Shown here: one piece after another, positions 6,201 to 42,699 of the stretch
Numbering within the stretch: the first letter of the stretch is position 1
Layout: every line of letters starts with the position of its first letter
Origin: Fimbriosthenelais zetlandica
Taxonomy: Eukaryota
Assembly: GCA_977030845.1 (NCBI GenBank)
Contig: OZ365111.1
Coordinates: 9,052,001 to 9,116,000 of the forward strand
Length of the DNA stretch: 64,000 nucleotides
Direction of reading: 5' to 3'
The notes under the pieces: model-generated
The model's database searches: none
The model's input: only the letters and a program-made list of their open reading frames with translations
What the model was told of the DNA's origin: nothing
Made by a program: the position numbers and the translations under genes

Positions 6201-8131
6201 ACCGTAACCGTAACTCAGTAATTACAATATATGTGGAGACGCAGGCCGGACCTGGCACCTCTAACGTGTCACCATCACGTGCATTGATCAACCAATCAGC
6301 CACTGTAGAACAACATTCCTGTAACGAGTCCTCATCTACATTCCTGGAAAAAAATTTAACGTGTCCACTATTAGGTCACACTACAAAAGTTTTTCCGGTA
6401 AATATTAGGCTTGGAACATCTGTCCAAAAAAGTTGATCCGAAACCACAGTACAAATGTATAGTGGTTTCGGTTCAACTTATTTTGGACAGACTGTACTTT
6501 AGGGATTTTTTTTCATGAGGGAAAACCTGACACTCACGGTCTTTCGATGCCAGCGTGGTTTCTTCTCAAGTGCTCCTTTAATATTTTCTCTTGAGCATTA
6601 TTCAAGTATGGCACACCTTCGTATACAAACTGGAAACATAAATCGAGTTTATTTTTGCGACGTCATAAAATAAACCAATTTCAACTTAATTTCATGAGAA
6701 TCAATCCTGGAGTCGACTCAGACTCACCTTGTTGAAGTCATAATTGTGATTAGCCAGGAACTCGAAACTTGCTGCCTGAGAAAGAATTAGAAAGTACGTG
6801 TACTTCAATTGTTAAATAATTCGATTTCAATTAGGAAGCACATAATTGACTGTTAGGTCACTTACCTCACAAGCGAATCTCTTGTTGATAGGCCCAAAAC
6901 TTTGGGGGAACAGATTGATATTGTAGCTATAAGTGATGAATCTAAAAATAAAAAGAATGGACGTAAGAATAGTAGATCCAAGGAGTACTGGGTATACACG
7001 CCCAGTACTAAAACTATTGAGCACTACAATTAGTTTTAAGCTCCCGAGACATGTAAATTTTCATATACTAGTCACTATCCCCTTCCAGAATGATAATAAA
7101 TATGTCTTAACTAGAATAATCATCTATCATTTCTCTACACACACAGATAAATTATACGAGAGATGTTTCTTACTCATTGGTATTTCTGACTTGTGCATAG
7201 GCAGACAGACCTGTAAAATAAAATGAATTCAACTACATGTAATATGAAAGACGTTTTTTCATTGCAGGCTAAAACTATAATGTGGCCTGATCTAATGAAA
7301 CATTAGTGGAATATAATTGGCTATCATCGGCAATTATACATAAAACACAAAAAAAATAAGAATCTTGGACTTACCAATTTGACACGGCAAAAACTTTCTA
7401 ACATTTTCCTTTAGTTTCTGATAACGTGCCTCTCCGTCATCAAATAAACTGAAGAAAATAGCAAAGAAGTTATATACAATGTAGAATATTTAAAATGTCA
7501 TTATCAAGGCATTCTATCGGCATGCATATCAATGATGCATTTCCCCGGATACTACAAAAGTCCTCACGAATAGCCTTACCTTGACCGTAGGGAGTCAGCA
7601 AAATATAAGCCAGTGAATTCCGTGTCAATGGCTGCAAAAGTTCGAGTAAAACACATTTTTAATAGATCTAGACTCCTTCAACTTCAAATGAAATGGGACG
7701 AGATTAATAGTACAAGTAATACACATTAAATCATAATAACCAATAAAGTTGCTTTACATTCACTGTTTCAGAGATTTTCAGTTTCATTGAAATCTACCAC
7801 GGGGTTTCATTGAAATCTAAACTATGTATTAAGCACGCATGGATATCTATATAGTCGTCGGCGCATCACGTGTACGGTGGGCCTACCACGGGGTACCGGG
7901 TACTTCGAAATTCGACCTGCCATTCGAGATTAGCCAATGTCAATGACATTTGATTTGACCATTATCAATAAAAGACACAACGACAACCACTAAAAGTCTG
8001 GAAACCAAGTCCCTAAACACTTATAGACAAGATGCATAAATGACACACTTACCAATAAACACAGCATCATCGATTTCGTCCAATATATAAGGCAAGGCTT
8101 TGGCAAACTGAAACCGCGTTACCTCACACAT
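3296..8131 (-). CDS. PNLDC1: PARN-like ribonuclease PNLDC1 (piRNA 3' Trimmer), multi-exon
   Basis: Spliced translation begins MCEVTRFQFAKALPYILDEIDDAVFIAIDTEFTGL...SLFDDGEARYQKLKENVRKFLPCQIGLSA and includes FEFLANHNYDFNKFVYEGVPYL, IVGHNCLMDLL, LFPNIYDTKH and HEAGYDAYMCG, so the CAF1/DEDDh catalytic residues are intact. It ends ...WKHSPIVRGFLWAGVFVSGGICVWALLGFPGPTRKN*, a hydrophobic tail typical of PNLDC1 rather than PARN. The exon junctions I translated keep frame; a few short exons around 4080-4610 were not translated. Confidence 0.92.
5230..5493 (-). mobile_element. tRNA-derived SINE (or degenerate tRNA pseudogene) in a PNLDC1 intron
   Basis: The minus strand reads GGGGCGTTAGCTCAGTTGGTTAGAGCG...GGTTCAATACC, giving Pol III A box (5475-5486) and B box (5414-5424). 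The T-stem and acceptor stem do not pair properly and a non-tRNA body follows. The 3' boundary is approximate. Confidence 0.65.
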
Positions 8132-14400: not shown

Positions 14401-17400
14401 AAGTAGCTTCCAATGATTTTTGAAAAAAAATTTCAAAGTGCCTAATTTTTCCAAATTCGGTTGTTACAGTGCCCACAGAAGAAACCAAAGAGACTGAGAT
14501 TCAGAATCCCGCCTATGTGGACGTTGCTCCATGCCCATGTGATTTAACTAAAGGTTCCTGTGACCTTGGCTGCTGTTGTGATACGGTAAGTTAAAAAATA
14601 AAACCTTCAGATATATATATTTTGAACAGTCAAATCAAGTTTAAACTGAAGTGTAATTGAATGTACTGAACTTGTGATCATTTCCAGGAGTGTACCACTG
14701 CAGACAAGGCCACGTTTGACTGTGTCCAGGGTGTAGCTGGTGGTTTTCCAGCTCCTGTACCCCAGTACAGCTGTGCCTCCCGCTATACCATTCGCGAAGA
14801 CTGGTTCCCATTTATGTGTGTTCACGCTGAAAATACAGCTTTTCTTGGCTATTATTTCTTTCCTTTAAAATCCACGCGCTCGGAGCTGGACTTCAATGAA
14901 AAAGCTGATGGCGTGAAACCCAAGTACTCATTCAAGTAAGTGGCATTAGTATCTACTTTTAGTATTTTTAGTCTCATATTTAATAAAAGAATATATTTCA
15001 GTGGGAGTCAAGAGTAATATCTTGCGGAAAAATCACATTTGGTTTTTTATTTATTTTTCAGGAGTAAAGATAAGAGATCCCAGTTCCCCAGTGATTCTTC
15101 AGTGGGCTACCAACACGGTGACAACATCAGGACCGGACGAGTAGAGAAAGCTGTCGCTGATAACGTCATTACCAGAGACAGCTTCCAGCTAGGCCTGCCA
15201 CAGAAATCCCTCCTGGGGGAATGTGTGACCACCTCCCCCGTCAAATACCTGGAGGATATTGACACCCAGTGTACGCGAACAGTCACCAAAGACTTATGCC
15301 ATTCCACTTCAATACTAAGCAGTGCAGTCTATGCCCAGCCCACCACAGGCACCCACCCACCATGCCCCAAAGCACCCGTCATTATTAAGTCCAAAGCTAC
15401 AAAGGAAATAGCTGAAGTCAACACCAACTATCTATGCATTTCAAGTCCATTGGACTATTTAAAATCAACTTCATATTACCAGGATTTTGTAAATCCTGGT
15501 CAAAAATCCCTCTTCTCCGATCCTGATTTTGACACATCGTTTTGTGACTTTAATCCTATCACTAATATTTATGAGTGTGAGTCCAGTGATCCTATGAGTG
15601 ATATAATGTCATATAATCTGACTCGTTGTTCATGGGATGACAGCTATACCCCAGCACCCACTCCGGTGTACAATGACACCACTGACACCTGTCACAATTC
15701 AATCATTGATGTTTTCTACAATTTCACATGGAGAGGTGGGGATATTCTGGTATTGAATGCCACATATATTCTTGCTGATCTCCCAACTGAGCTGGAGCGT
15801 GTTGATAATTACCCAGTGACCTACACAGACTTTGATAGTTATGATTATTCAGATGATGGCAATCTAACAACCACAGTCCCAACAGTCAGTTCCACTGAGA
15901 GTTCCATTGTTCCCCCAGATATGGACTATGGACTTGTAGAGTCTATATCTACTGTAGATGTCATTGTCACCAAGTATCCTGCAGTTCTAAGTCAAAAGAT
16001 CAGAGTTGTCTTCTGGCAGGAGTACACGCTTCCCAACGTAACCCATGATTCCGAATCGGAGGTGCCGCAGAGAGCTGAAAGATACCAGCGATCTGGAAAA
16101 ATGGGTCAGTAGTCTTCAAGGTTCAAATGATTCGCCCAAAGGGCCTTTCTCCATTCGGTTTGCGATTGAGAATCCAAATAGAAGTTAAGACTCCTCTGTA
16201 ATTTTTTTTAATCTTTTGATATTGCTTGCTTGCCTATTTAAGTCATAATTAATTTTCTCTGTAATTTTATGTTTCTAGGTTATGAGGAGGACCTGCCAGT
16301 ATTCAGTGGGGCACCTGTATATAACGAGACATCTGATACCCTGATACAAATGGACATCTCTCCCCCCTCTCAGCTCGCTCTCTGGCAGCCTGGACCTACT
16401 GGTCTCTGTGCTCAGGCTGGTAGGAGGGTGGTGGACTTCGGTCAGGATAGTTCCAGCAGCTGTGCCTTAAGACTGGGCCTCTCAGATTTCCATCAAAACT
16501 GCAATGATCTAAGGTAATACTTTTTTATTTCTGGAATATTACCTAATCAGACTGATGTTTGTTATGTTGGTATCTGAAAATCGTATAAAATCAAGGAGTC
16601 TTTTTATACTTTAAGTGAACAAAGTTAATATTATTTAAATGGTGATTACCTTATCAGACAGATATTTTTTAAGTTGGCTTCTAAAAATCGTATAAAATTA
16701 AGGAGTCTTTTTATGGTTTAAGTGGACAAAGTTGAAATTATTTACATAATCTTTGTAAAATCTTTGTGCAGGAAACAAATTCTTCATCACCAAAATGCCT
16801 TGATGAGCTCCATATACATCAGCCGCAATGGCGATCCTGTACTCACTAACCTCAATGACTGGATACAAATCATCAGGCAAGTTATACAGTATTTACCAAC
16901 CAAGAAATGGTATCCAATTACTAAATTTCATTCATTTTGGCCATCCCTATATATTAAATTAATTCAAATCCTCTTTGTCACAGGGAAAATATAAGTCATA
17001 TCTTCCCAGAGGGAGACATTTCCATGACGACCGGTCAAGGAGGGACGACCGCAGCAACGACCAATCCCGGATCCACTTCGGGAGATAACAGTACAGAAGC
17101 GACTGCGACTGCGACCACTCCCACATATAACAGTACCGAGGCCCCGCCCACTGATGGTGGATTACTGAGTGACATTATAGGCCGCTGTGCTAACCTCACG
17201 TCCGGCATTCATGTGGACATTATGTATGCCCAGTCTGGAGCTGTGAACTCACTACCACTGTATGAAATAGTGGGCGCCAAAATCAGGTAGGTTTATCATT
17301 AACTTTACATAATGGAACTGTTTAATAAATGTATTATAATTTGAATTAGTTTCCTTTTAAGTAAATAAATGCTAATCCCACTTTAAATACGAAGTAATGT

Positions 17401-20318: not shown

Positions 20319-23300
20319 ATGGACCACCGAGAAATGTTTAAGGCTGGTGTCAGCACGGTAGATGACTTGCGGACAAAGAGAAGAAATGAAGAAGCAGGTT
20401 AGGTTAAGCAGTAGAGATTATATATGTGATTGTTTACGTTTTACCTTGGTCTAGCCTGTTCATCATCGATAGTGAGCGATAATTGAGTGAAGTTCCCATG
20501 CCTGTACTATGGGAATGGCCATGTCACACTGTCTATCTGTCATATATCATAATATTATATTCATTCAGTCTTAAGATGACATATCAATGCAGTTATCCTC
20601 TAAGTATGCCCATACTATGCCATACCAATGTCCATTAATAAAATTCCTTTTATTTTTAGTTATTTTTTACCTTATAGTTTTAATTTGTAGATGGAAGGAA
20701 GACTAGGAGACAAAGAGCGATCAACTCAAAGCGAGTTAGGCTCGGATCGGAAGGTGAGCATGAGGAAGACATCTCCACGGAACAGGTATGTTAAAACTGA
20801 TTTTCGTGTCTACCTCATCTTACAAGCCTACCAGAATCTATTTCAGAATACCAGTTAAGAGTTTTTCTGCAATAAATAATTTTGTGTGGACAATGGATGA
20901 AATACTAAATTGCCACAAAGAGGTATTCTAATGGTCGCCCCCTTACCTGCGATGCAAAAAATATAGGTGGCATCTATATTTTTCTATGATTAATTTTTTT
21001 TTTAAAATAGCACTCTAATTTTTCCCTCTCTGTCTTGTAGGTCCTGCTTGTAACCAAACGGTTTGTGGCAAAAGATGGCCACAAATTGGAACAGCTTAAA
21101 TTTCTGCAAAGGGCTTTTGCTCAAGGAACACTCCTGACGGAGACTTTCTTGAAGTAAATACCTATTTCTTCAATTATAACAAACTAAGTTCTGCAAAATT
21201 TAGAAATAACTAAATTTATTCTGCTATAATTAGTCCTATTACTGGTATACAACTTTTTTTTACAACTTTGAAAATACACGTCTGCATAGCATAACATTGT
21301 TGAAATTATTTTAATACCATTAGTTTTCATTCCTGTGTAATTTATGTGATCACTAATCTATTTTTGCGACATTTATTTTCAACAGGGTTGACAGTAGTTT
21401 GTCTACCATGGTGGGTCTGCTGACTGGGAATGATGCTGAAGTTCAGCTTCAGGCTGCCTGGTGTCTAACCAACATGGCAGCAGGTACAGATGATCAGGCT
21501 CAGGCCGTGCTGAGAGCTGCTGGGGCTTACCTGGTCACCTACCTGACTAGTGGCAACATACCTCTACAGGTAGGACTAAAGAGAAAAAAAAATATATTCA
21601 GTATATCCATATTTTAATGTTTATTAAAAGCCGAAATTTTTATTCCTGTGATATATTTTATTTAAAGATCTTTCACCCTTTGTGAAAATTACCACGATTA
21701 CTATCATTTTCTTGCTTTAATGACATTTAATTTTGAATTTATACCCACCGTCGCATCTTTTCCTTTCACAGTACCAGTGTTCGTGGGCTATTGGAAATCT
21801 GGCAGGCGACGGTCCAGCCTGTCGTGACATTCTTCTGTCACAAGGCGCCCTCCAGCCCCTAATTAATCATCTCCAGGTATGTATTTTATCCCTAGAGCAA
21901 TATACGAAATCTATATTGACATTGTTTTAAGTCAAAAGTATATATTGACAGTTATACCGTACATTAATTTCCTCTCTGTCCTTTCATTAAAGTATTCGGT
22001 GGATTTCATCTATTTAATACTAAGGTGGAACTGGACGAGGGTTGGGAATCATCAATGCCTCTCATAGTATTGAATACTTTTTTGAGTAATTTGTCTTGAA
22101 CTTAAATTCATAAAGTGATGTTTTAAACCCTTGCAGTCCGACATGAATCACGTCGTTCAGTCAGCAGCTTTTGCTTTGTCCAACATGGCTAGAGGACCTG
22201 GGGCAAACACGGAGTAAGTCATGATATATAATATTAATGCGTTTAAATTGATGTTATATAAAAATAGAATGTCTTTTATTAATGTATTTAATCATATTTT
22301 ATCGATGTAAATTATGTGATAAATTAATATTACCCTTTACATTTTATGATCAGGTTGATGGTTGGCCTGGGTCTGTTACCAAATCTTATTCCAAACCTAA
22401 CATACAACGGTGAGAGGCTAGATGTCATCGCCGAAGCTGCCTGGGTCCTTACATACATCGCTGCCAGGTAATTCTTCCGATAATCTAATGCACATTCTTT
22501 TTTCTATTTATCCAAATTGATGTCTACCAGGAACCAGGAATTTAGAAAATATTATTTTAACATTGGTTTAATTCTATATCTTTCAGTGGTGAGCACGAAG
22601 AAAAGTTGTTGTCCTGTGGAGCCGTTCAACAAGTATCAGCTTTGTTAGTAGCTCTGGCCCAAAATCATCCTGAGGATTATAAGGTGAAATAGTTGTCTTT
22701 TCGTCCTTCTCTTGAGCAAAATATTATGTAGTAAATTCTAAGATCATACAAGTTTTGGGACGTGTTTCATTCTTGCCCTGTCATTTTGTGAATCAATTTT
22801 TTTCAGGTATTTACACCCACCCTCCGTTGCCTTGGTAACTTGTGCAGTGCCAATGATGAAATGACCGAATTGGCTTGTATGAATCCCAACCTGATTCCAT
22901 CCCTGGGAAAATGTCTCACTTCTAACCACAGACACATCAAGAAAGAAACGCTCTGGGTTATTTCAAACATCACAGGTGAGACCTGCCTGTCTATCCTTGA
23001 TCACATTGTCTCACTCTTGGACGATTTGGGATTGTTGACTATGAGTATTAAATCTATGATCAAATTATACATTATATATAATCATCCCCGTTGCTCCCCA
23101 ACTTGCAAAACTGGATGGATACTGTATATATGATCAAATGATTCAAAGATATCCTCTCTAATTATTATCCTAGGTACTCCAAATGTTGCTGAAATGGTCG
23201 TAACCAATGGATTGCTGTCAATGATTGTTCAGTTTCTGGATTCTACTTTTGATATGAAAGCGGATGTAAGTATTTTCCACTGCATGTCTATATTTTCCCT

Positions 23301-24008
23301 ATTTCTGTAATATGTAATGTATGGTTGACTGTGAATATTTTTTTTATTTATAGGCGGCATATGCTCTATGCAACATAGCCAGTCACAGTAAAAAGCTCTG
23401 TGAGGAAACGGTGCAGCAGGGGGGTCTACTGAACATGATTCCTTTACTCAAGTCTCCAGACCCAGATCTCGCCAATATGGGCCTCAGCTACGCTGAAATA
23501 GTCCTCAAAGAAATACCTAATGTAAGATCTCAAGTCTGTGTCACATAAAATAATAACTATCCAATGATCACGAAAATCAAAGGTTAAAAAATAACTGGCA
23601 TTTAAACTGTAAATTAGTTCTTTCAGACTTGTACATTTCCCTTTTGTGTTGTAACTGAATATTTTGTTTTATTCCTCCAGGGAAAGTTTCTCTTTGAAGA
23701 AGCCAAGGGCTTAGAAGGTCTGGAGGTCCTCGAATATCACAGCAATGACGCTTTGAGAGATCAAACCACAGAAATTTTGGACAAATACTTCTACAATACA
23801 GATGTAAGTACTCCTATATTTTTTTTTATCTTCAATCAATTTTCAAATTCTATTATAATATACATCCATGTTTGGATCGCAAGAGAAATTTAATCAATTT
23901 CAGAAATGACCATTCATATTCGGCACGGACTGTCAGGTCCATGTTCCTGTGTGGCCCCATTTAATATGTGTATTTTTCTTCCAGATAATGGAAGATGACG
24001 ACCGGTGA
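20319..24008 (+). CDS. TMCO6: Transmembrane and coiled-coil domain protein 6 (importin-alpha-like ARM-repeat protein)
   Basis: IBB-like N-terminus [48 protein letters not shown]...[21 protein letters not shown] resembles TMCO6 rather than canonical importin-alpha. ARM motifs [14 protein letters not shown] and [15 protein letters not shown]. Confidence 0.8.
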
Positions 24009-24942
24009 AGTGGCATAATTTTCCTCCCAAATTCTCATATATCAATCTTGGCTTGTAAGTAAATTAATGCAGTTCATTTCTTATGCTTATCAGGAATGTA
24101 CATAATATGAAAAGGACGAAAACTTTTTGTGGGTTTTTTTTTTGGAAAAAAACTTTAATGTATTCCGGCAAGATCAACTTGTATAAAACAGGTACAAGCT
24201 CCTCTGGGATGAATTATGTATATCAAAATCACAAAATAAATATGCAACTGATGAAGTATTTGAACCTTACTCTCTAAGTTGATCATCGATTTGATAGAAA
24301 ATAGGGAAATCCACAAAATGAAATATACTCCGTTCTTAATGGGTTTTTTCCATGTCTAAGGACTAAACAGAAGATTATCTCCTCACATTCTGGTAGATTA
24401 TCCTGAAGTGACGGTTTGCAAATTGCAAACACCAGGTGCTCTACAAATTAAGCTGACTAGTGATTTGACATTTTTTAATTTTTTTTTGATACGCGGAAAT
24501 GTATTTATAGTTATATTATACCTCAGGAACACCCATGCTATGGCAGCATGAGTGTTGCCAAGCTAACGTCTTGAGTTAGTTAGTCCACCTGTGTCGTATA
24601 TATGGCTCTCAGTGGTGAGAATGTTTCACTGTACATGTGAACAGCTTCCACTGGCAAACTTATAACAAGCCTTAAGCTTCCACTAAACATACCACATTAT
24701 GTCCTCGTCACAATACTCACCTTTTAAAAAGCCATTAATAGCGATATAACTAAAACGAGTTGTCTTCATCACAGTTCACAAACACAGGCCATATAAACAC
24801 AGCCTTTTGTAAATGGTTCTTTTTTTCACAATTTTTTTTTATGTGTCCATAACAATATTAAACATCTATCCTCTGTAGTAAAAGTGATATTTCCACCCTC
24901 CAAGGTGTAGTAAACCAAAGAAAAATGTATGATACAAAGTGT

Positions 24943-25988
24943 CTAGCTCAGATCCATGGCAATTTGCTCGGCGAGCCAGGGTTGGCCCGAGCGGCGAAGA
25001 GCAGTGCGGAACACTTCGAAAGCCTTAGCGCCACGGAAGGGCAGGATTTGGAGGAGGGTGTCAATCTGCTGTGCACGTGATGGCTGGCTGGTGATAAAGC
25101 GGTACAGATCTCCAGTGAGGACGCTATCCGTGCGCAGATAGGTGAGCAAATCCTTATCAGGAATCATACTGGCGGCGATGTTCTGACGATGGTGCTCCAA
25201 GAAAGCCACATGTTTCTCACTCATTCCTTCTTTATCCACGCCTGAAATGTTAAAGATTTGCGAGTTATAATACTTTACATCCAAATTTTCATAGAACATG
25301 AAGAGAGAGACTGGAAAGCTAATGTTTTTAAAGAAATCACATTCTATTGCAAGAAGATAATTAGTTAAAGATGTCTACCAGTTATATATTGCATTGCAAC
25401 AAATTGCATCAAGTGGTGACAGGAGAGAAAATGGCTATGGAATGATATTTTTTTGTAGGAATTATATTCGTACTAAGGGTCGCTCAAATCGTACCTGTTC
25501 CCTTGAGTAGTTCTGACAGATGACCTTGTCCTGATTTCTGTAAGGCGTCACAGAAACCGTCAGTGATGGCCTCCTCTGTAATGTTGAGGAGGTCCGGCAG
25601 GAGGCGTTCCATGGCATCCCGACGCGTCTTCATGCGACGTACCTTCCAAAAACATAATGTAATACAATGCATTAATCCTTAACATAATGGTAAATAACTT
25701 ACATATTTCAGATTTACAAAATTTTCTAATACGAAAATTTTTTTTTTTACATAATACATTCTAATACGAAATAACATTCTTAACATATTATATTATTACA
25801 TTTATTTGTAACTTAAAATTCTAATGCCAAATTATATCTTTGAAATTAAAATCCTTAACCCTTACCCGGTCAACAAGAACTTGATCGATGAGGCCTTTGA
25901 CGAAAAGATGTGAGAGAAGGACGTTGTTAGGGTCGAGGTGATCAGCTATTATCGCTTTGTAGCGGCCTAGTGGACGCTCATCACTGAT
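24943..25988 (-). other. Two tandem CARD domains
   Basis: CARD1: LGRYKAIIADHLDPNNVLLSHLFVKGLIDQVLVDRVRRMKTRRDAMERLLPDLLN...FCDALQKSGQGHLSELL. CARD2: MSEKHVAFLEHHRQNIAASMIPDKDLLTYLRTDSVLT...ITSQPSRAQQIDTLLQILPFRGAKAFEVFRTALRRSGQPWLAEQI. Both fit the CARD pattern, including the RGxxAFxxFxxAL...Q.WLAE signature in CARD2. Confidence 0.8.
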
Positions 25989-28900
25989 CTGTAAAATATT
26001 TGGGACAAAAGATTGACAAATTTTACCATGTTAAAAATACCTATAAATTATATAAAATATATCATACATACATGTATATTCATCCTATTTATCTTCATGA
26101 ATAATATGAAAATAATATTGGAAATATATCCATTAAAACTTTACTTTTTCCTTCGAGTCACATTTCTCAATGCTGTGACTGTTGGACTCTTTCCCCACTG
26201 GGCTGACATCCTTCTCTTCTCGGCCGTCTTCTCTCTTCCCATTGGTGATAACATTATTTCCTGTGCTTGTTTTAGGACTGGGATTATTATTGAGATTTCC
26301 CGGTTTACCATGGCTCTCCATTTTCTTCTGTTTTCCCTCAGAAGGTCGACTAGAGCCACGGTAATTGTTGTTGTTATATCTTGCATTATGATCACGGTTG
26401 TAGTAGGGACCTCTATAAGGATAATGTGGACCATATCGACCATTGTAATTCCTTGAATGATTTTGAGTTCGAGACCCTACATGATGTTCACGAGTATAGG
26501 TTTTATCCATCCCTTGATCAACTCTCTTGTTTATTTTACCTCCATCAGGAGGACCTTTAACACTCTCCTCATTATTATTTAGTTGATCCTTGGTTGGCGA
26601 CTCTTCCTGACTTCGACCAGATTCTGGTTTATCCGTTTTTTCGCTAGTCTCTTTCCTCGGTTCAATTTTCTCAGGTACTGTAGGAGTTTCGTCAGTTTTT
26701 TGGTTTAGACTAGCTTGTTTAGCCAGGCGCCTGCATATATCATCGAGAACTTCTGTGCCCATGTATTTACTGGCTTCACTCTTGGTTGGTTCTTTATCAC
26801 CAGAGTTACACCTTTGTCTCATTTTGCCATCATTATTGTAATGATGATGGTTTGTTTGTCGGTGATTCTGCCCCTGACCGTTACCAGACTTGGACCTGTT
26901 GTTGTGATGGCCGCCGCGGTGTCTCTCTGGATTCCCCCTGCCGTAGTTTTGTTTCGAGAAAGACTGATGTCTTCCCTGATTGAGTTTATTGAATGCAACC
27001 TGAGTACGGATGTGATTCTGGTAAGTCCCAGTTGAAGTGAAGCCACTGAAATGTTGTCTCTTTGCCTGGGTGTTTCTATACCCAGTATTGACACCTGAGT
27101 AATTGGCAAAGTCCTTAGAGTTCATATTCCCATTGGAATAGGTGGCAGGGCCTTGGTGTTGGCCGGAATAGGTTCTGTTCGATGCCCCCAGGCCAAATGT
27201 ATTTTGATATTGGTTGTAGGGCCCGTTGGGGAAATGTCCCATGTTCACAAAATTGGCGGCCTGGGTGAGAGGGGCCTGCTGGTGGTGGTGATGGTGGTGG
27301 TGCAGGGTTTGCATCTGTTGTTGGTGTTGATGGTGGTGATGTTGGGTGTTGGGAGCATTGTTGTTGAGATTGCCAGTGGCGGTGTGGTGGTACTGCTGCT
27401 GGGAGTAGGGCATGACGCCTGGATCTAAACCATGCTGATGATGGTGATGGACCGACTGGTATCCTCCCAGTGTTCGCGTCTCCTGAGGTGCTGGTGGTGG
27501 AGGAGGTGGGGGTGGGGGTGGGGGTGGACCCTGAGGTCCGGTCATCCCATACTGACCCACCGTCTCCGCCTTGATAATCTCCTGGACAACATAAGTTGGC
27601 ATCACCTGATTGTTCCTCATATTCCCATTGTTGGGTGCGTAGTTACTTTGGCTGTAGTGGTTGTGACTGTGGTTGGCTCGACCAAAGCCCGAGGATCCTG
27701 GTGATTTGTGGTTTAACCCTGTGGATGATATGGACGAGCTGAAGTGGTTGTTCCTGGGGAAGTCACTGGGTCCTTGATTATGGGTGACTGGGAAGTTTTG
27801 GAGCCCGGACTGGACCGAGCCTGGGTTGACTCCATTGCTCATATGCCTGACATGGTTGCTGGTCATGTAGATATCATTAGGTCCATCGTGATTCATATCA
27901 CTCTCATGATTTGCATGGTGGGCATAGTTAATGTTAAAATTCCCTTGCATTGCTCCTGATGTCATGTTCATGTTAGGACCTCCGTTCATATCATTCAGGG
28001 CCATACCACCACCACTGCCACCGTTTGCACCCCCTCCAGACCCATAACCATGCATGGATGTGAACTCCCCCTGGTTCATATAGTCCTTGTTGTTCCTCTG
28101 TTTACTATCCATCCCATTCATGGTCATGTGCATGTTGACATGATCAGGCCTAGTGTCCACCGTGTTATACAGGCCTTGACTGGGGTAGGTCGGAGTGGTT
28201 GTGAACACATTGGAGGAGGCCGAGTTGAGGGTGGCTTCAGTGAAGTTGGCGGCGGCAGATACTGTGAGACCAGTATCATTAGATGCCACCATTGAGCTGA
28301 CATTATGCGCCGGGTTGATATAGTTGGTGTTTGTGGTTACGTGACTGTAGGACATGATTTGATGGAAATCTGCCTGGCTGACATCACTAGATGGGGCACT
28401 TGTGACAGAGGTGTGGTTGTCCAGGTGGACTGGGTCGTCATCTTCATCATGGTGAGCCTGAATATCAGTGGGGTCCCATTCCAGGTCTGCCTTGGTGGAC
28501 TGTGGACGGCTTGGGCGAGCATCATCATGTAAATCTATAGACTGAAAAAGAAATGTTTAAATTAGCTCTAGAATTAAAAAAAAATACACACATAATGTAA
28601 GCCTACATGTATACACATATTATTTATGATCGGTACCGTATATTGGAATATTTATTAATTTATTGTTTATTGATGGTCATTTACGAACAGTCTAAAGTTG
28701 AATACAAAAATAATATTATATTGCAGGTAACTATTGAAATATTGAAGGTAGCTAGACTATCGCAAACTTATATCTTAGTTAATGAGTGGAATGTGGGTGC
28801 ATGTACATACATTAGGGTGCATTGATCCGTTCTCTTGTCTTGGATTCCCACTCAACATTCTCAGGCTCTCTGCGGTCCCAGCTGACGAGCTCCCTGTATT

Positions 28901-30420
28901 AGGCAGGGCCATGACAGCGGCAGTAGAGACACCCTCCCGGCTCGAGCAGTACTTCCATAGGGGTGTGTTATTCATGGTGACTCGGCTCACCATGCCGTAC
29001 CCCTCCAGTCTCAGCAGGGTTGGGTTGATGTCCTTGGCTGATTGGTAACCCAGAGTCTTGGCCAGGATGCCAGCACGGAGAGGCTTGTCCTCCTCCTTCA
29101 ACATTCCAAGCAGCTTTTCAATATGCTGCTGGGATAAAACCTTCTTCTTCTGAAAAATGAATGAAATAAATGATTTAAGACCGAGATTAATTTTTTAAAT
29201 ACCAATATTGCTATTCTACTGATTTTGGTATAGGATTTCAATTTCAGATTACATGTATACATGTCATTTGGCCAGGCAATATCAGATATTTTCAATCATT
29301 GTAACCCCACAAATTCTTCAGTAGGCCTACTAGAAATGAGCTGATTGATCTTATAATGAGACTGAAGATGAATCATCTTGCTCTGTCAGAACTTGATCCA
29401 GATTTCCTCATCATCATCGTTGACTCAATTTATAGGCCACAGACAGACAAATTATTCACAAGCCAGGAAATAAAACTGAAGGGAATCGGTTAGTTTTACA
29501 ACAGGGGCAAATTGGCAGTTTGAAATGTCAGTGGATCATTCAATAGGCCAACAGACTTTCACCTTTCACGAGAACTGGGTTTTATTTATGTGGATCATTC
29601 CAGATTAAAACCAAATGTTGCCAAAGTTCTGTGGTTTAGACCTAAATAGTAGTCTATGGATCTACAGGTATAGGCCAAGCAGAATATCGATATTTCAGAA
29701 GGCTAAGCTGTCTTGATGTCAGCTCTGGATTTGTCCGTGTTAATTGGGTGATGGGCTAGTATATAGCATCATTGAATACCCTCACTACATCCATTCCCAG
29801 TATTGACCCAGAATATAGCCCATACTGATCAATAGCCAATTCAAGTGCAGTGTGTGCAGGTCGGTCGGCCTTGGCAGGGTAGAGGGGCGGGCGGTGTGTA
29901 GGCCAGGGTGCGGCTGGCACATATTGGAGGCCATACTCGTCAGTTCTCACGAGAAAAATACCTCAAAAATACACATGTCAATGTCACAATGGACCCCAAC
30001 CATAATCTTCATTTTCGTTTCTTGATTATATCAATGTGATTAGACTGTCAGAGCACGTGTAATCTTTGTCAGATGGGTGCTTTGCAAAAGTATGTGTCCT
30101 GACAGCCCTCAGTGCCGCATGGAACAATGCAAAAATCGTGAGCTGTCAATGCAACTCGCCAACTGTCAAAAAATATACAAGGCACCATCGTCACGGCACG
30201 CATGCCCTCGTCAAAATACCACCAAGACGGCTTTATTAGGTGCAATTCGATTTAATATAAACTAAAAGTAAGGGTGAATTTATCATTCTTGTTGACATTA
30301 AATGCATACAAATATATGAGTCATCAAAATGTGATCTACATTTTGTGGCCATGTCTCCGGCTTTCGATCGTGCTCGCATGTGGTGTGTCTTACCTTCTTT
30401 CCTTGTTGTGACGCGGCCAT
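24943..30420 (-). CDS. Z-alpha/Z-beta-like domain + prion-like disordered region + tandem CARD protein (~1110 aa), 6 coding exons: 30394-30420, 28811-29149, 26145-28541, 25866-25988, 25495-25642, 24943-25241
   Basis: All five introns have AG acceptors and GT donors, and phases are consistent (0,0,0,0,1), giving 3333 nt with no internal stop. Exon 2 encodes a Z-alpha-family winged helix, exon 3 an N/H/Q/G-rich region, and exons 4-6 two CARD-like death folds. Confidence 0.85.
28950..29140 (-). other. Z-alpha-family (Z-DNA/Z-RNA-binding type) winged-helix domain
   Basis: IEKLLGMLKEEDKPLRAGILAKTLGYQSAKDINPTLLRLEGYGMVSRVTMNNTPLWKY aligns by eye with ADAR1 Z-beta ([24 protein letters not shown]...PPIW) and ZBP1 Z-alpha2 (AQALGMRTAKDVNRDLY). 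The Asn and the wing Pro-x-Trp are conserved. Confidence 0.8.
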
Positions 30421-30575
30421 ATTTGCACACTTTTTACAGAGATAGGTGTAAAATCTTGGTATATACTAAGTCCTAAGCTAGTGCAGTATAAATATTGGGT
30501 ACATATCGGCGTTAAACAAAGCCAATACACAATAGTTCCTAGCACGCCATAGTCCACCAGGCGGAATCCACAACT

Positions 30576-30627
30576 GGGGAATGCCCTCTGACGTCATCAT
30601 CTCATAACGAGGCTATAGGGAATCCCC
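30576..30627. promoter_or_regulatory. kB-kB-CRE motif cluster upstream of the Z-alpha/CARD gene
   Basis: GGGGAATGCCC (30576-30586), palindromic TGACGTCA (30589-30596) and GGGAATCCCC (30618-30627), 156-207 bp upstream of the ATG at 30420. Confidence 0.6.
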
Positions 30628-31352
30628 CCATTTGTTTTGATTTCATGTGATGACAAAACAACATATTAAAAACTTTTTTTTACCACATAGATGCGGAGAT
30701 ATATTGAATAAGAATGGCAATGTTGGGCTTTGATGAAAATCCTTTAGAATCGGAGAAGGATGACAAGGTGGCTTTTGTCCGCGTAATTGGAGCAGGAATA
30801 GTGCCCGGGCAAGGCGAGTGGGCGTGGCACCAGGTTGTTGAATGTGAATAATGTAGGAATAATTTCTCTTATCAAAGCGTTCCTACACTACGCTTTTCTT
30901 TCGTTCAATTGCATAAAAATATAAATGACACACATAAATGTCAAATCTTTATTAGAAAAGACAAATTCACTCGTCATTAGAAGTGACAGGGTATCGGCAC
31001 GATTTTGGCACGTTAGTACGCTTTTTTTTCCATTAATTTAATATTTCGTATCATATATCATAGAACAAATTCTTTATCTGAAGATAAAATATATATCACA
31101 TATGTGCACGTGTATATCCATACAATCAGTGTTTTAAATTTAAAATGTCAAGTCATGTTTTATTAGGAATAGATTAACAAAGCACAAAGCTTTATCATTG
31201 CCAATAAATTATATCACAGATAATAATCTTCCAAGTGAATCATAGGACTCTTGAAAGTTGTATCTATTGACAAGGCCATGTCAATACATACATACTTAAG
31301 TTAGCAGCTGGTTAGTTACTAAAATATCAATAAATAAGTTCGGTAATCAAGT

Positions 31353-42211
<10,859 letters not shown>

Positions 42212-42699
42212 GTTGCTTTCCGACACACCGCAAATTAACCAATCTCTACCTGGAATATAAAAAGGCATAGACTCTAGAGTTTAGTCTAATGCTCAGACAG
42301 TACTAGTAGATCTAGTAGTAGTCAGGTAGGCCTACCGTACGTTACTACGTAGGCCTAGCCCTAGCCAATATTCCACTCAAGTCTATCGAATTCATTTATC
42401 CTACTCAGTAAAGTTTAATTTAGGTCAGGCACGAACTGACTATCCCTGGCTCTGCAAGACAAGTCACAAGTCATGCAAAGACCCGCCCCATTCCAACCCA
42501 GGCCAAGTCAAGAGTAAGACTAAGACTGGCCAACAAATAACGTTATTAATCAAATGAAAATGCATGAACTTGAAGTCATGAGGAAATTTGAGGAACTAGT
42601 CCTCATATATTAGAAGATAAATACCTGTTCATAAGATGACAAGGCGGCGAAGAGTCAAGAAAGTTGTTTTATTACTTTGCTGGCGTAAACCTTGAGCAG

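What the first reader, a model, noticed from the sequence alone, without database searches (positions are those of the whole stretch)
24943..30420. Z-alpha-like domain fused through a prion-like linker to tandem CARDs: candidate invertebrate Z-nucleic-acid immune sensor
Seen: six exons splice in frame to ~1110 aa with architecture Z-alpha-like / ~800-aa low-complexity / CARD-CARD. Established: the best-characterised cellular Z-alpha proteins are ADAR1 (deaminase), ZBP1 (RHIMs) and fish PKZ (kinase), and tandem CARDs are the signalling module of RIG-I/MDA5 acting on MAVS. Inference: this protein may couple Z-RNA/Z-DNA sensing directly to CARD-filament signalling (MAVS-like or caspase), a ZBP1 analogue built from different effector parts. 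No deaminase, helicase or kinase domain is present. I recall that non-ADAR Z-alpha proteins have been reported in some invertebrates, so novelty must be checked.
Basis: partly seen in the sequence, partly recalled or inferred. Interest (0 to 1): 0.92.

Follow-up and report, generated by a model that had tools for sequence, protein, structure and literature searches.

The report
Tyrosine-less Z-domain fused to tandem CARDs
A real, transcribed and conserved animal gene joins a winged-helix domain of the ADAR/ZBP1 "Z" family, through a roughly 840-residue disordered linker, to two CARD signalling domains; this combination was not found in the literature searched, but the domain lacks the tyrosine that Z-DNA/Z-RNA recognition depends on.

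Summary
Six GT-AG exons on the minus strand (CDS 30420-24943) splice in frame to 1110 aa. A 4.86-kb intron-free RNA-derived contig from a related species (79% aa identity) is colinear across all five junctions. Two further genomes keep the same exons, phases and exon lengths.

Pfam supports z-alpha (21.9-23.3 bits, cutoff 21), CARD1 (28.0 bits) and CARD2 (45-48 bits). The linker has no family hit and no RHIM. A profile of the Z domain retrieves bona fide ADAR Z domains (E to 5e-15). Its AlphaFold model best matches ZBP1 Zbeta and ADAR1 Zalpha structures. The Z domain is the most constrained part of the protein (dN/dS about 0.01-0.05).

The residue equivalent to ADAR1 Tyr177, described in the literature as indispensable for Z-form recognition, is Leu in all four orthologues. 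Asn173 and Trp195 are kept. CARD2 is closest to the RAIDD CARD rather than RLR or MAVS CARDs.

Verdict: a new domain architecture of a known logic, a binding domain fused to a death-fold oligomeriser, as in AIM2, ZBP1 and RIG-I. It is probably an inducible immune or cell-death adaptor or sensor, with conserved kappaB and CRE sites and a uORF. Z-form specificity is unsupported. The source taxon is unresolved.

The parts
30618..30628 (-). kappaB consensus site (GGGGATTCCC / GGGGGATTCC) about 45-55 nt upstream of the 5' end of the orthologous mRNA
   Evidence: One search found five distinct kappaB-consensus loci in the 64 kb, close to the shuffle expectation. One search shows the equivalent GGGAAATCCC (L001) and GGGAATTCCC (L002) at the same aligned position, and conservation stops just upstream of it.
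30589..30596 (.). Palindromic CRE/ATF site TGACGTCA
   Evidence: It is the only copy in the window and is invariant in L001 and L002.
30576..30586 (-). Second kappaB-like element (GGGCATTCCCC)
   Evidence: Conserved in L001 (GGGCATCCCC) and degenerate in L002. The reading is by eye.
30394..30572 (-). Exon 1: a 5' UTR of at least 152 nt plus the first 9 codons (MAASQQGKK). The CDS part is 30420-30394.
   Evidence: blastn of mRNA contig L004 matches 30572-30394 at 89%. The GTAAGA donor is shown. The same first exon is present in L001 and L002.
30478..30504 (-). Conserved upstream ORF (ATG at -84, 8 codons, stop at -60)
   Evidence: Same position and length in the window, L004, L001 and L002. A longer 31-codon version starts at -153/-152 in the three others.
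28811..29149 (-). Exon 2 (phase 0-0, 113 codons): lysine patch, Z-family winged helix, short variable tail
28946..29137 (-). Z-domain (aa 14-77). Asn51 = N173, Leu55 = the Y177 position (29014-29012), Trp74 = W195.
   Evidence: Pfam z-alpha 21.9 bits. PDB alignments. AlphaFold pLDDT 78.9 with helix-helix-helix-strand-strand. Foldseek top hits are ZBP1 Zbeta and ADAR1 Zalpha. The profile search returns Z domains. Identity between orthologues is 85-95%.
26145..28541 (-). Exon 3 (phase 0-0, 799 codons): disordered linker rich in N/G/S/H/T/P/Q/Y, with poly-Pro, His/Gln tracts and an Arg/Tyr-rich stretch
   Evidence: Composition. No Pfam family. Orthologues P0001-P0003. dN/dS 0.07 against L004.
28449..28514 (-). 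Conserved linker island 1: PSRPQSTKADLEWDPTDIQAHH (aa 132-153)
   Evidence: Nearly invariant in four species. The partner is unknown.
27531..27605 (-). Conserved linker island 2: VMPTYVVQEIIKAETVGQYGMTGPQ (aa 435-459), followed by poly-Pro
27156..27272 (-). Conserved linker island 3: PLTQAANFVNMG.F..G.YNQ.Q..FG.G (aa 546-584)
   Evidence: The hydrophobic-N-hydrophobic-G core recalls a RHIM tetrad only loosely, and there is no Pfam RHIM hit.
26715..26768 (-). Conserved linker island 4: KYMGTEVLDDICRRLAKQ (aa 714-731)
25866..25988 (-). Exon 4: first half of CARD1
   Evidence: The 123-nt length is the same in all three genomes (with the L001 end corrected to 13250).
25495..25642 (-). Exon 5: second half of CARD1 (ends in phase 1)
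   Evidence: Pfam CARD 18.1 bits on profile positions 39-84. The spliced CARD1 of P0067 scores 28.0 bits. hhalign of CARD1 against CARD2 gives probability 89.7% and E 1.8e-6.
24943..25241 (-). Exon 6: CARD2 and the stop codon
   Evidence: Pfam CARD 45.3 bits. The best PDB match is the RAIDD CARD 3crd, E 4.5e-6.

Best explanation
This is one transcribed, conserved animal gene. It encodes a 1110-aa cytosolic or nuclear protein built from three modules.

1. A conserved lysine patch plus one winged-helix domain of the ADAR/ZBP1 Z-domain family. By its closest relatives it was apparently grafted from an ADAR-type Z domain, as a single phase-0/0 exon. It has Leu where Z-form binders have Tyr177, so it is 'Zalpha-like/Zbeta-like'.
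2. A roughly 840-aa disordered region (exon 3 plus the tail of exon 2). It is N/Q/G/S/Y/H-rich and R/Y-rich, and carries four conserved short motifs.
3. Two C-terminal CARDs that arose by internal duplication.

Most likely mechanism (inferred, not shown): the N-terminal module binds a ligand, probably a nucleic acid but not with canonical Z-form specificity. The linker promotes multivalent clustering. The clustered tandem CARDs nucleate a CARD filament that recruits a CARD-bearing caspase or adaptor. This is the same sensor-to-death-fold logic as AIM2, ZBP1 and RIG-I. Conserved kappaB and CRE sites and a conserved uORF suggest inducible, translationally gated expression.
For: Shown:
- Gene model and single mRNA.
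- Z-family membership: Pfam 21.9 and 23.3 bits. PDB sequence hits are ZBP1 Zbeta and ADAR1 Zbeta. The AlphaFold model has pLDDT 78.9, and Foldseek's top hits are 4ka4, 3eyi and 1qbj at TM 0.7-0.9. The orthologue profile finds 40 proteins, of which 36 are Pfam z-alpha and 16 are ADARs, with E down to 5e-15.
- Both CARDs pass Pfam's cutoff and are homologous to each other.
- Purifying selection is strongest on the Z domain: dN 0.013 against 0.16 in the linker, omega about 0.01-0.05. Identities are Z 85-95%, CARDs 68-77% and linker 39-46%.
- The kappaB and CRE sites and the uORF are conserved.

Inferred:
- CARD2's nearest solved relative is the caspase-2 adaptor RAIDD.
- From established knowledge, CARDs signal by nucleated homotypic filaments.
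Against: - There is no functional data of any kind.
- The ligand is unknown. The Tyr-less Z domain could bind no nucleic acid at all.
- The Pfam z-alpha score is marginal (19.2 bits, below cutoff, in the full-length context).
- The tandem-CARD AlphaFold model is poor (pLDDT 55.6), and Foldseek gave no hit below E 1e-3.
- No CARD partner was identified.
- The kappaB and CRE sites could lie in the 5' leader rather than the promoter, because the transcription start is not mapped.
- dS is saturated, so the omega values are rough.
- The taxon is unknown.
Confidence: 0.5

Rival explanations
1. One reading: a genuine Z-RNA/Z-DNA sensor. The domain recognises left-handed helices and couples that directly to CARD-filament signalling, as a ZBP1 analogue.
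For: - It belongs to the Z-domain family by profile, fold and reciprocal search.
- The Asn173 and Trp195 equivalents and the PLW wing motif are kept in all orthologues.
- Selection on the domain is very strong.
- The best structural matches include Z-DNA complexes 3eyi and 1qbj.
Against: - The Tyr177 equivalent is Leu in all four orthologues, whereas relatives have Tyr or Phe.
- The K169 and R174 equivalents are Ala and Pro (read from the alignment).
- PMC13136903 states that N173, Y177 and W195 are indispensable and that Zbeta lacks the Tyr.
- PMC11298590 states that wHTH domains bind Z-nucleic acids only when these residues are present, and that prediction alone is insufficient.
- There is only one Z domain. 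ZBP1, PKZ and ADAR1 p150 each have two (from my own knowledge).
Confidence: 0.17
2. The Z-like domain is not a nucleic-acid sensor. It is a protein-interaction or regulatory module, or binds another structure such as G-quadruplexes, as reported for ADAR1 Zbeta. The protein would then be a scaffold, adaptor or inhibitor inside a CARD network or an RNP condensate, not the primary receptor.
For: - The substitution is Zbeta-like, Leu here for Ile335.
- PMC13136903 reports Zbeta as a G-quadruplex-specific domain with no Z binding.
- The long linker has an R/Y-rich, prion-like composition and four conserved short motifs that look like docking sites.
- CARD2 resembles an adaptor CARD, RAIDD.
Against: - The conserved lysine patch directly precedes the domain, and the N173/W195 pair is retained. 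Both are what one expects of a nucleic-acid surface.
- No partner is known.
- Nothing distinguishes this reading from the best explanation except the nature of the ligand.
Confidence: 0.27
3. Artefact: the Z exon, the long exon and the CARD exons belong to separate genes, or the long open frame is a chance or degenerate low-complexity ORF.
For: - Retaining intron 3 would stop translation 3 codons after exon 3 (ORF 26133-28355).
- There is no RNA data from the source species itself.
Against: - The intron-free 1101-aa ORF on an RNA-derived contig of a related species spans all six exons. That contig also carries spliced exons of the neighbouring gene.
- Introns 2-5 are only 156-269 nt.
- Exon structure and phases are conserved in three genomes.
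- dN/dS is far below 1 in all parts.
Confidence: 0.02

Closest known systems
ZBP1 (DAI)
   Same: An N-terminal Z-family winged helix is followed by a disordered region and C-terminal homotypic oligomerisation modules that trigger cell death or NF-kB. The Z domain's best sequence and structure matches in the PDB are ZBP1's second Z domain (2l4m, 3eyi, 4ka4).
   Different: It has one Z domain rather than two, and that domain lacks the Tyr. It has CARDs in place of RHIMs, with no Pfam RHIM hit. The linker is far longer. It is not an orthologue: the nearest relatives of the Z domain in the profile search are invertebrate ADAR Z domains.
ADAR1 Z domains (Zalpha/Zbeta), especially invertebrate ADARs
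   Same: These are the closest sequence relatives. The named ones, in score order, are ADARs of Branchiostoma, Saccoglossus, Lytechinus and Antedon/Anneissia, sharing the INPTL-x-x-x-x-x-G...P(P)LW signature. Leu55 aligns with Ile335 of human Zbeta.
   Different: There is no dsRBD and no deaminase domain. The best-matching ADAR domains have Phe or Tyr at the key position, whereas this protein has Leu.
RIG-I / MDA5 tandem CARDs
   Same: Two CARDs sit in tandem, joined by a short connector and fused to a putative nucleic-acid-binding module. CARD1 gives a borderline hit to the CARD_2 model PF16739 (28.5 bits against a cutoff of 28.2 in full-length P0067).
   Different: The CARDs are C-terminal rather than N-terminal. 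There is no helicase or CTD. On the isolated CARD1, generic CARD (28.0 bits) outscores CARD_2 (24.7 bits). RIG-I scores only E 0.54 by sequence. MDA5 2CARD ranks 26th with low probability in the fold search.
RAIDD/CRADD CARD (the caspase-2 adaptor)
   Same: It is the best solved-structure match of CARD2: 3crd, E 4.5e-6, about 80 aligned residues.
   Different: RAIDD pairs its CARD with a death domain and has no nucleic-acid-binding module. Sequence similarity between CARDs does not predict the binding partner.
AIM2-like receptors (HIN + PYD)
   Same: The logic is the same: a nucleic-acid-binding domain fused directly to a death-fold domain that nucleates a filament on clustering. This comparison rests on my own knowledge and was not tested here.
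   Different: The binding fold differs (wHTH against HIN/OB), and so does the death-fold subfamily (CARD against PYD). AIM2 has no long prion-like linker.
Fish PKZ
   Same: It is another lineage-restricted graft of Z domains onto an immune effector module (from my own knowledge, and PMC10523160).
   Different: PKZ has two Tyr-bearing Zalpha domains and a kinase domain. Here there is a single Tyr-less domain and CARDs.

Membership tests
Z-domain family (Pfam z-alpha PF02295) | Profile match at or above the curated cutoff (21 bits) | tested here: met
   21.9 bits on window exon 2 and 23.3 bits on P0067:1-125. The match is marginal: 19.2 bits when the full-length P0067 is scanned.
Z-domain family (Pfam z-alpha PF02295) | Reciprocal search: a profile of the orthologues retrieves bona fide Z domains | tested here: met
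   There were 40 hits in 1.84 billion representatives. 36 carry Pfam z-alpha and 16 are ADARs, with E down to 5e-15. Four HEAT-repeat proteins are false positives.
Z-domain family (Pfam z-alpha PF02295) | Winged helix-turn-helix fold (three helices plus a beta hairpin wing) closest to solved Z domains | tested here: met
   The AlphaFold model has pLDDT 78.9 with H-H-H-E-E. Foldseek ranks 1-8 are ZBP1 Zbeta and ADAR1 Zalpha, TM 0.70-0.73 (query-normalised) and 0.77-0.89 (target-normalised), rmsd 1.7-2.6 A. Generic MarR/ArsR wHTH proteins follow closely.
Z-form-binding Zalpha (functional subclass) | Asn173 and Trp195 equivalents | tested here: met
   Asn51 and Trp74 are invariant in all orthologues.
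Z-form-binding Zalpha (functional subclass) | Tyr177 equivalent on helix alpha-3 | tested here: not met
   Leu55 in the window, P0067, L001 and L002. It aligns to Tyr of ZBP1 and ADAR1 Zalpha and to Ile335 of ADAR1 Zbeta. PMC13136903 and PMC11298590 treat this Tyr as required.
Z-form-binding Zalpha (functional subclass) | Pro192-Pro193 in the wing; basic contacts K169, K170 and R174 | tested here: inconclusive
   The wing reads Thr-Pro (P193 kept, P192 not). The K170 equivalent is kept. The K169 equivalent is Ala and the R174 equivalent is Pro. Pro at the 174 position is common in invertebrate ADAR Z domains.
Z-form-binding Zalpha (functional subclass) | B-to-Z / A-to-Z conversion or preferential binding of Z-form nucleic acid | not testable with these tools
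   This needs purified protein with CD or EMSA.
CARD (Pfam PF00619) | Profile match above cutoff (23.9 bits) for each of the two domains | tested here: met
   CARD2 scores 45.3 bits (window exon 6) and 47.9 bits (P0067). CARD1 scores 28.0 bits on the spliced orthologue. Window exon 5 alone covers profile positions 39-84 at 18.1 bits. hhalign of CARD1 against CARD2 gives E 1.8e-6.
CARD (Pfam PF00619) | Six-helix death fold | tested here: inconclusive
   The AlphaFold model of both CARDs is all-helical, with 5-6 helices each, but has pLDDT 55.6 (CARD2 about 70-80, CARD1 below 50). Most top Foldseek hits are CARDs or other death-fold domains (ASC, ARC, CARD8, RIP2, Apaf-1), but the best E is 0.04.
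RIG-I-like receptors | DExD/H helicase and C-terminal RNA-binding domain; CARDs at the N-terminus | tested here: not met
   There are no helicase or CTD hits in any piece or in P0067. The CARDs are C-terminal.
RIG-I-like receptors | RLR-type CARD profile (Pfam CARD_2, PF16739, cutoff 28.2) | tested here: inconclusive
   28.5 bits on full-length P0067. 24.7 bits on the isolated CARD1 and 15.5 bits on CARD2.
ZBP1 | RHIM motifs downstream of the Z domains | tested here: not met
   There is no Pfam RHIM (or any other) hit in the linker at E up to 10 (window exon 3) or up to 1 (P0067:120-915). HMMER's filters may drop very weak matches.
ADAR | dsRNA-binding motifs and an adenosine deaminase domain | tested here: not met
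   Both are absent, whereas the related ADAR hits show A_deamin and dsrm.

The most novel reading that the evidence does not exclude
Despite the Tyr-to-Leu change, the domain recognises a non-B nucleic-acid conformation (Z-form, a B-Z junction or a G-quadruplex) and thereby directly seeds CARD filaments. That would make it an independently evolved invertebrate counterpart of ZBP1, in which an ADAR-derived Z domain was exon-shuffled onto a death-fold output. It would show that conformation-specific nucleic-acid sensing was wired to cell-death signalling more than once in animals.
Probability: 0.2. Interest if true: 0.85.

Novelty: new variant of a known kind. Interest (0 to 1): 0.6.

Why it matters
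Cellular Z-domain proteins with a described function are ADAR1, ZBP1 and fish PKZ (PMC10523160, PMC11298590). A fourth effector context, CARDs, would widen the picture of how animals use this fold. It would also give a natural experiment on the role of the 'indispensable' tyrosine. Here is a Tyr-less Z domain under stronger purifying selection than any other part of its protein, so it must do something.

The gene is compact and transcript-supported, so the question is directly testable with a 75-residue domain and a 190-residue 2CARD fragment. It is also a caution: published Zalpha screens that require N173 and Y177 (PMC11298590) would have filtered this family out.

Against over-rating it: shuffling of death-fold domains into new architectures is common in invertebrate immune genes (PMC2575513, PMC8998645). 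The family was seen in only four species-level sequences, all of unknown taxon.

Tried and rejected
- Source taxon. A word-indexed search with the neighbouring Tectonic-domain exon returned only unnamed Logan and ENA proteins. Rfam found nothing in the 64 kb. The run and analysis accessions occur in no paper held. Only a weak hint remains: the nearest named Z domains are ambulacrarian and cephalochordate ADARs.
- Annotated full-length orthologues. The exon-3 search found three unnamed clusters. The 2CARD-region search found nothing. The exhaustive Z-profile search found only one orthologous exon fragment, P0004. The full-length P0067 is hidden behind a fragment representative, so other full-length members may also be hidden.
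- CARD in the 20 non-ADAR Z-domain hits: none has one.
- RHIM or any other domain in the linker: none. The VN[MV]G core of island 3 is only a loose visual resemblance, and I do not claim it.
- Tandem-CARD structure. The alignment was shallow, and MAFFT first misplaced the exon-5 pieces of L001 and L002 onto CARD2, so I dropped them. The model still had low confidence, so its arrangement cannot be compared with the RIG-I 2CARD.
- Paralogous exons elsewhere in the window: none.
- My first L001 exon-4 end was wrong by 6 nt. It was corrected to 13250.
- Literature. Six searches found no Zalpha-CARD protein. One search was badly designed and uninformative.
- I did not type the spliced protein into any tool. 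Work on the spliced protein used run_python files or the orthologue P0067.

Full report
**1. What is in the sequence**

The feature lies on the minus strand. Reading the reverse complement, I built a six-exon model:

| Exon | Coordinates |
|---|---|
| E1 | 30420-30394 |
| E2 | 29149-28811 |
| E3 | 28541-26145 |
| E4 | 25988-25866 |
| E5 | 25642-25495 |
| E6 | 25241-24943 |

Every intron is GT-AG with a pyrimidine-rich acceptor. The exon-to-exon junction phases are 0/0/0/0/1. The sum is 3333 nt, which is 1110 codons plus a stop. Introns 2-5 are only 269, 156, 223 and 253 nt. The window contains no N.

**2. Is it one gene?**

Yes.

- A word-indexed protein search with exon 3 found three unnamed clusters.
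- The genomic loci around two of them (L001, L002) carry, in the same order and orientation, a Z exon, the long exon, two small exons and a CARD exon.
- Splice sites, phases and the lengths of E4/E5/E6 (123/148/299 nt) are identical. The first exon MA[A/T]SQQGKK|GTRAG is also present upstream in both.
- A cluster look-up then revealed P0067, a 1101-aa uninterrupted ORF on a 4859-nt Logan contig (L004, run ERR14707600).
- P0067 is 79% identical to my model and colinear across all five junctions without gaps.
- blastn of L004 against the window breaks precisely at my exon edges. It adds a 152-nt 5' UTR contiguous with E1 (30572-30421). It also contains two spliced exons of the convergent neighbour gene (23378-23522 and 23681-23807), so the contig is RNA-derived.

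This is transcript-level support from an orthologue, not from the source species.

**3. Domains**

- **Window pieces.** Pfam z-alpha scores 21.9 bits on E2 (cutoff 21). CARD scores 45.3 bits on E6. The C-terminal half of a CARD falls on E5 (18.1 bits, profile positions 39-84). E3 has no hit.
- **Spliced orthologue, cut by domain.** z-alpha scores 23.3 bits, CARD1 28.0 bits on PF00619 (24.7 on CARD_2), and CARD2 47.9 bits. The linker gives nothing at E up to 1.
- **Internal duplication.** CARD1 and CARD2 align end to end (hhalign probability 89.7%, E 1.8e-6), so the pair is an internal duplication.
- **Nearest solved CARDs.** CARD2's nearest solved relative is the RAIDD CARD (E 4.5e-6), followed by ARC, CARD8 and ASC. 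CARD1 has only weak PDB sequence matches: designed proteins, at least one built on the 1cy5 (Apaf-1 CARD) template, and RIG-I at E 0.54.
- **Absent domains.** No deaminase, dsRBD, helicase, kinase, RHIM or TM-type family was found.

**4. The N-terminal domain is a real Z-family domain but lacks the tyrosine**

Evidence for family membership:

- A profile of the three genomic orthologues was searched against 1.84 billion representatives. It gave 40 hits: 36 carry Pfam z-alpha and 16 are ADARs, with E down to 5e-15.
- The four other hits are HEAT-repeat false positives.
- The named hits are, in score order, ADARs of Branchiostoma, Saccoglossus, Lytechinus and Antedon/Anneissia, then Strigamia, Ephydatia, Lingula and Oscarella.
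- The AlphaFold model (pLDDT 78.9) is helix-helix-helix-hairpin.
- Foldseek's first eight PDB matches are ZBP1 Zbeta (4ka4, 3eyi, 2l4m) and ADAR1 Zalpha (1qbj).

Evidence on the key residues:

- The HMMER alignments to ZBP1, ADAR1 Zalpha and ADAR1 Zbeta place Asn51 on N173 and Trp74 on W195.
- They place Leu55 on Tyr177, which corresponds to Ile335 of Zbeta.
- Leu55 is invariant in the window, P0067, L001 and L002.
- In the 82 related domain instances, that column is overwhelmingly Tyr. It is Phe in the best-matching ADAR domains, and only occasionally Ser, His, Glu or Ala.

What the literature says:

- PMC13136903 states that N173, Y177 and W195 are indispensable for Z-form recognition. It says Zbeta lacks the Tyr, and reports Zbeta as a G-quadruplex binder.
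- PMC11298590 states that wHTH domains bind Z-nucleic acids only with the full residue set. It adds that profile or fold similarity alone does not establish Z binding.
- That paper's screen kept only candidates with both N173 and Y177, so this family would have been excluded.

**5. Constraint**

| Region | Identity between orthologues | omega, window vs L004 |
|---|---|---|
| Z domain | 85-95% | 0.008 (dN 0.013) |
| E2 tail | 26-43% | 0.116 |
| Linker | 39-46% | 0.068 (dN 0.162) |
| CARD1 | 68-70% | 0.070 |
| CARD2 | 71-77% | 0.038 |

dS is saturated, so the ratios are rough. The ranking is still clear: the Tyr-less Z domain is the most constrained module and is not a decaying relic.

The linker is 799 aa in exon 3. 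Its composition is N 11.8%, G 9.5%, S 9.4%, H 7.6%, T 7.1%, P 7.0%, Q 6.6% and Y 4.3%. It has a 12-residue poly-Pro run, His/Gln runs and an R/Y-rich stretch. 'Low-complexity, prion-like in composition' is a fair description. I did not run a prion predictor.

Four islands in the linker are nearly invariant:

- PSRPQSTKADLEWDPTDIQAHH
- VMPTYVVQEIIK..VGQYGM.GPQ
- PLTQAANFVN.G.F..G.YNQ
- KYMGTEVLDDICRRL

Their partners are unknown.

**6. Regulation (noticed while checking exon 1)**

- The aligned upstream regions of the three genomes are unalignable until a kappaB consensus site: GGGGATTCCC, GGGAAATCCC and GGGAATTCCC respectively (window 30618-30628).
- This is followed by an invariant TGACGTCA (30589-30596, the only one in the window) and a second kappaB-like element.
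- A highly conserved 5' leader comes next.
- The leader holds a uORF with its ATG at -84 and its stop at -60 in all four sequences. A 31-codon version is present in three of them.
- The count of kappaB-like sites in the window is not above chance. The evidence here is positional conservation.
- The transcription start is not mapped.

**7. Mechanism**

Shown: the gene, the mRNA, the three modules, their conservation, and the missing Tyr.

Inferred: the wHTH plus lysine patch binds a ligand. Clustering, helped by the multivalent linker, brings the 2CARDs together. These nucleate a CARD filament that recruits a CARD caspase or adaptor. This is the logic of AIM2, ZBP1 and RIG-I. Because CARD2 looks most like RAIDD, a caspase-recruiting output is at least as likely as a MAVS-type one. 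CARD similarity does not predict partners, however.

I put 0.5 on this general reading. I put 0.17 on canonical Z-form sensing, 0.27 on a non-nucleic-acid or Zbeta-like (G4 or protein-binding) scaffold role, and 0.02 on a gene-model artefact.

**8. Comparison and novelty**

- It is not a ZBP1: there is no RHIM, only one Z domain, and no Tyr.
- It is not an ADAR: there is no dsRBD or deaminase.
- It is not an RLR: there is no helicase, and the CARDs are C-terminal.
- None of the 20 non-ADAR Z-domain proteins retrieved has a CARD.
- No long protein shares the 2CARD.
- Six literature searches and four papers read found no Zalpha-CARD protein.
- Absence from these libraries is not proof. Full-length members can hide behind fragment representatives, as P0067 did.

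I class it as a new variant of a known kind: a new domain architecture within sensor/death-fold signalling. It was seen in four species-level sequences of an unidentified, poorly annotated animal lineage.

**9. Surroundings**

- Downstream, a convergent plus-strand Arm-repeat gene has exons around 22.8-24.0 kb.
- Further on there is a Tectonic-domain gene (15039-16112). Its orthologue lies on the same 749-kb ENA contig as the Z-CARD orthologue fragments, so synteny is kept.
- An ORF with a weak Dpy-30 motif lies at 41444-42268.
- There are no paralogous Z or CARD exons in the window and no Rfam families.

Noticed in passing
window 30576-30628 (minus strand), aligned with L001:~7540-7600 and L002:~6215-6275: There is a conserved promoter-proximal block: a kappaB consensus site, an invariant CRE (TGACGTCA) and a second kappaB-like site. 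Conservation between the three genomes starts exactly at the first kappaB site.
   Followed up: partly
window 30478-30504 (minus strand); L004:71-97; the -84 to -60 interval in L001 and L002: A conserved 8-codon uORF lies in a very conserved 5' leader. In three of the four sequences a 31-codon uORF (..IPPGG..YCVLALF..) starts at -153/-152 in the same frame. In its most conserved stretch the changes are at third codon positions, which hints at a conserved-peptide uORF.
   Followed up: partly
window 22800-24260 (+ strand); L004:4567-4857: A convergent Arm/HEAT-repeat gene has its last exons at 23378-23522 and 23681-23807, with a probable AATAAA near 24234. Its 3' end abuts or overlaps the 3' UTR of the Z-CARD gene, and the two are merged in one Logan RNA contig.
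   Followed up: partly
window 15039-16112 (+ strand): A large exon encodes a Tectonic (TCTN_DUF1619) domain. Its 45%-identical orthologue P0070 sits on the same 749-kb ENA contig as the Z-CARD orthologue fragments P0004 and P0068, so the neighbourhood is syntenic. No named homologue shared words with it, which shows how poorly annotated this lineage is.
   Followed up: partly
window 28449-28514, 27531-27605, 27156-27272, 26715-26768 (minus strand): Four nearly invariant short motifs sit inside an otherwise fast-evolving disordered linker. They are likely docking or assembly motifs with unknown partners. The third has a hydrophobic-N-hydrophobic-G core.
   Followed up: no
proteins P0009, P0010-P0011, P0013 (hits): Unnamed multi-Z-domain proteins come from metagenome-type contigs. 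P0009 has three near-identical Z repeats with Ser at the Tyr position. The P0010 cluster (about 860-900 aa, 12 members) sits on 3-6 kb contigs from ENA, Logan and JGI/IMG. Their organisms and functions are unknown.
   Followed up: no
proteins P0007, P0018, P0031, P0033: The first half of the Z domain (LLGMLKEEDKPLRA..LAKTLG) resembles a HEAT-repeat unit closely enough to pull four HEAT-repeat proteins into the profile search. It also gives a weak Pfam HEAT_2 hit on exon 2. This is a source of false positives for anyone mining this family.
   Followed up: yes
window 31353-31682 (minus strand): A Q/P-rich terminal ORF of another minus-strand gene ends about 780 nt upstream of the 5' end of the Z-CARD mRNA match (30572). 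It has no Pfam hit.
   Followed up: no
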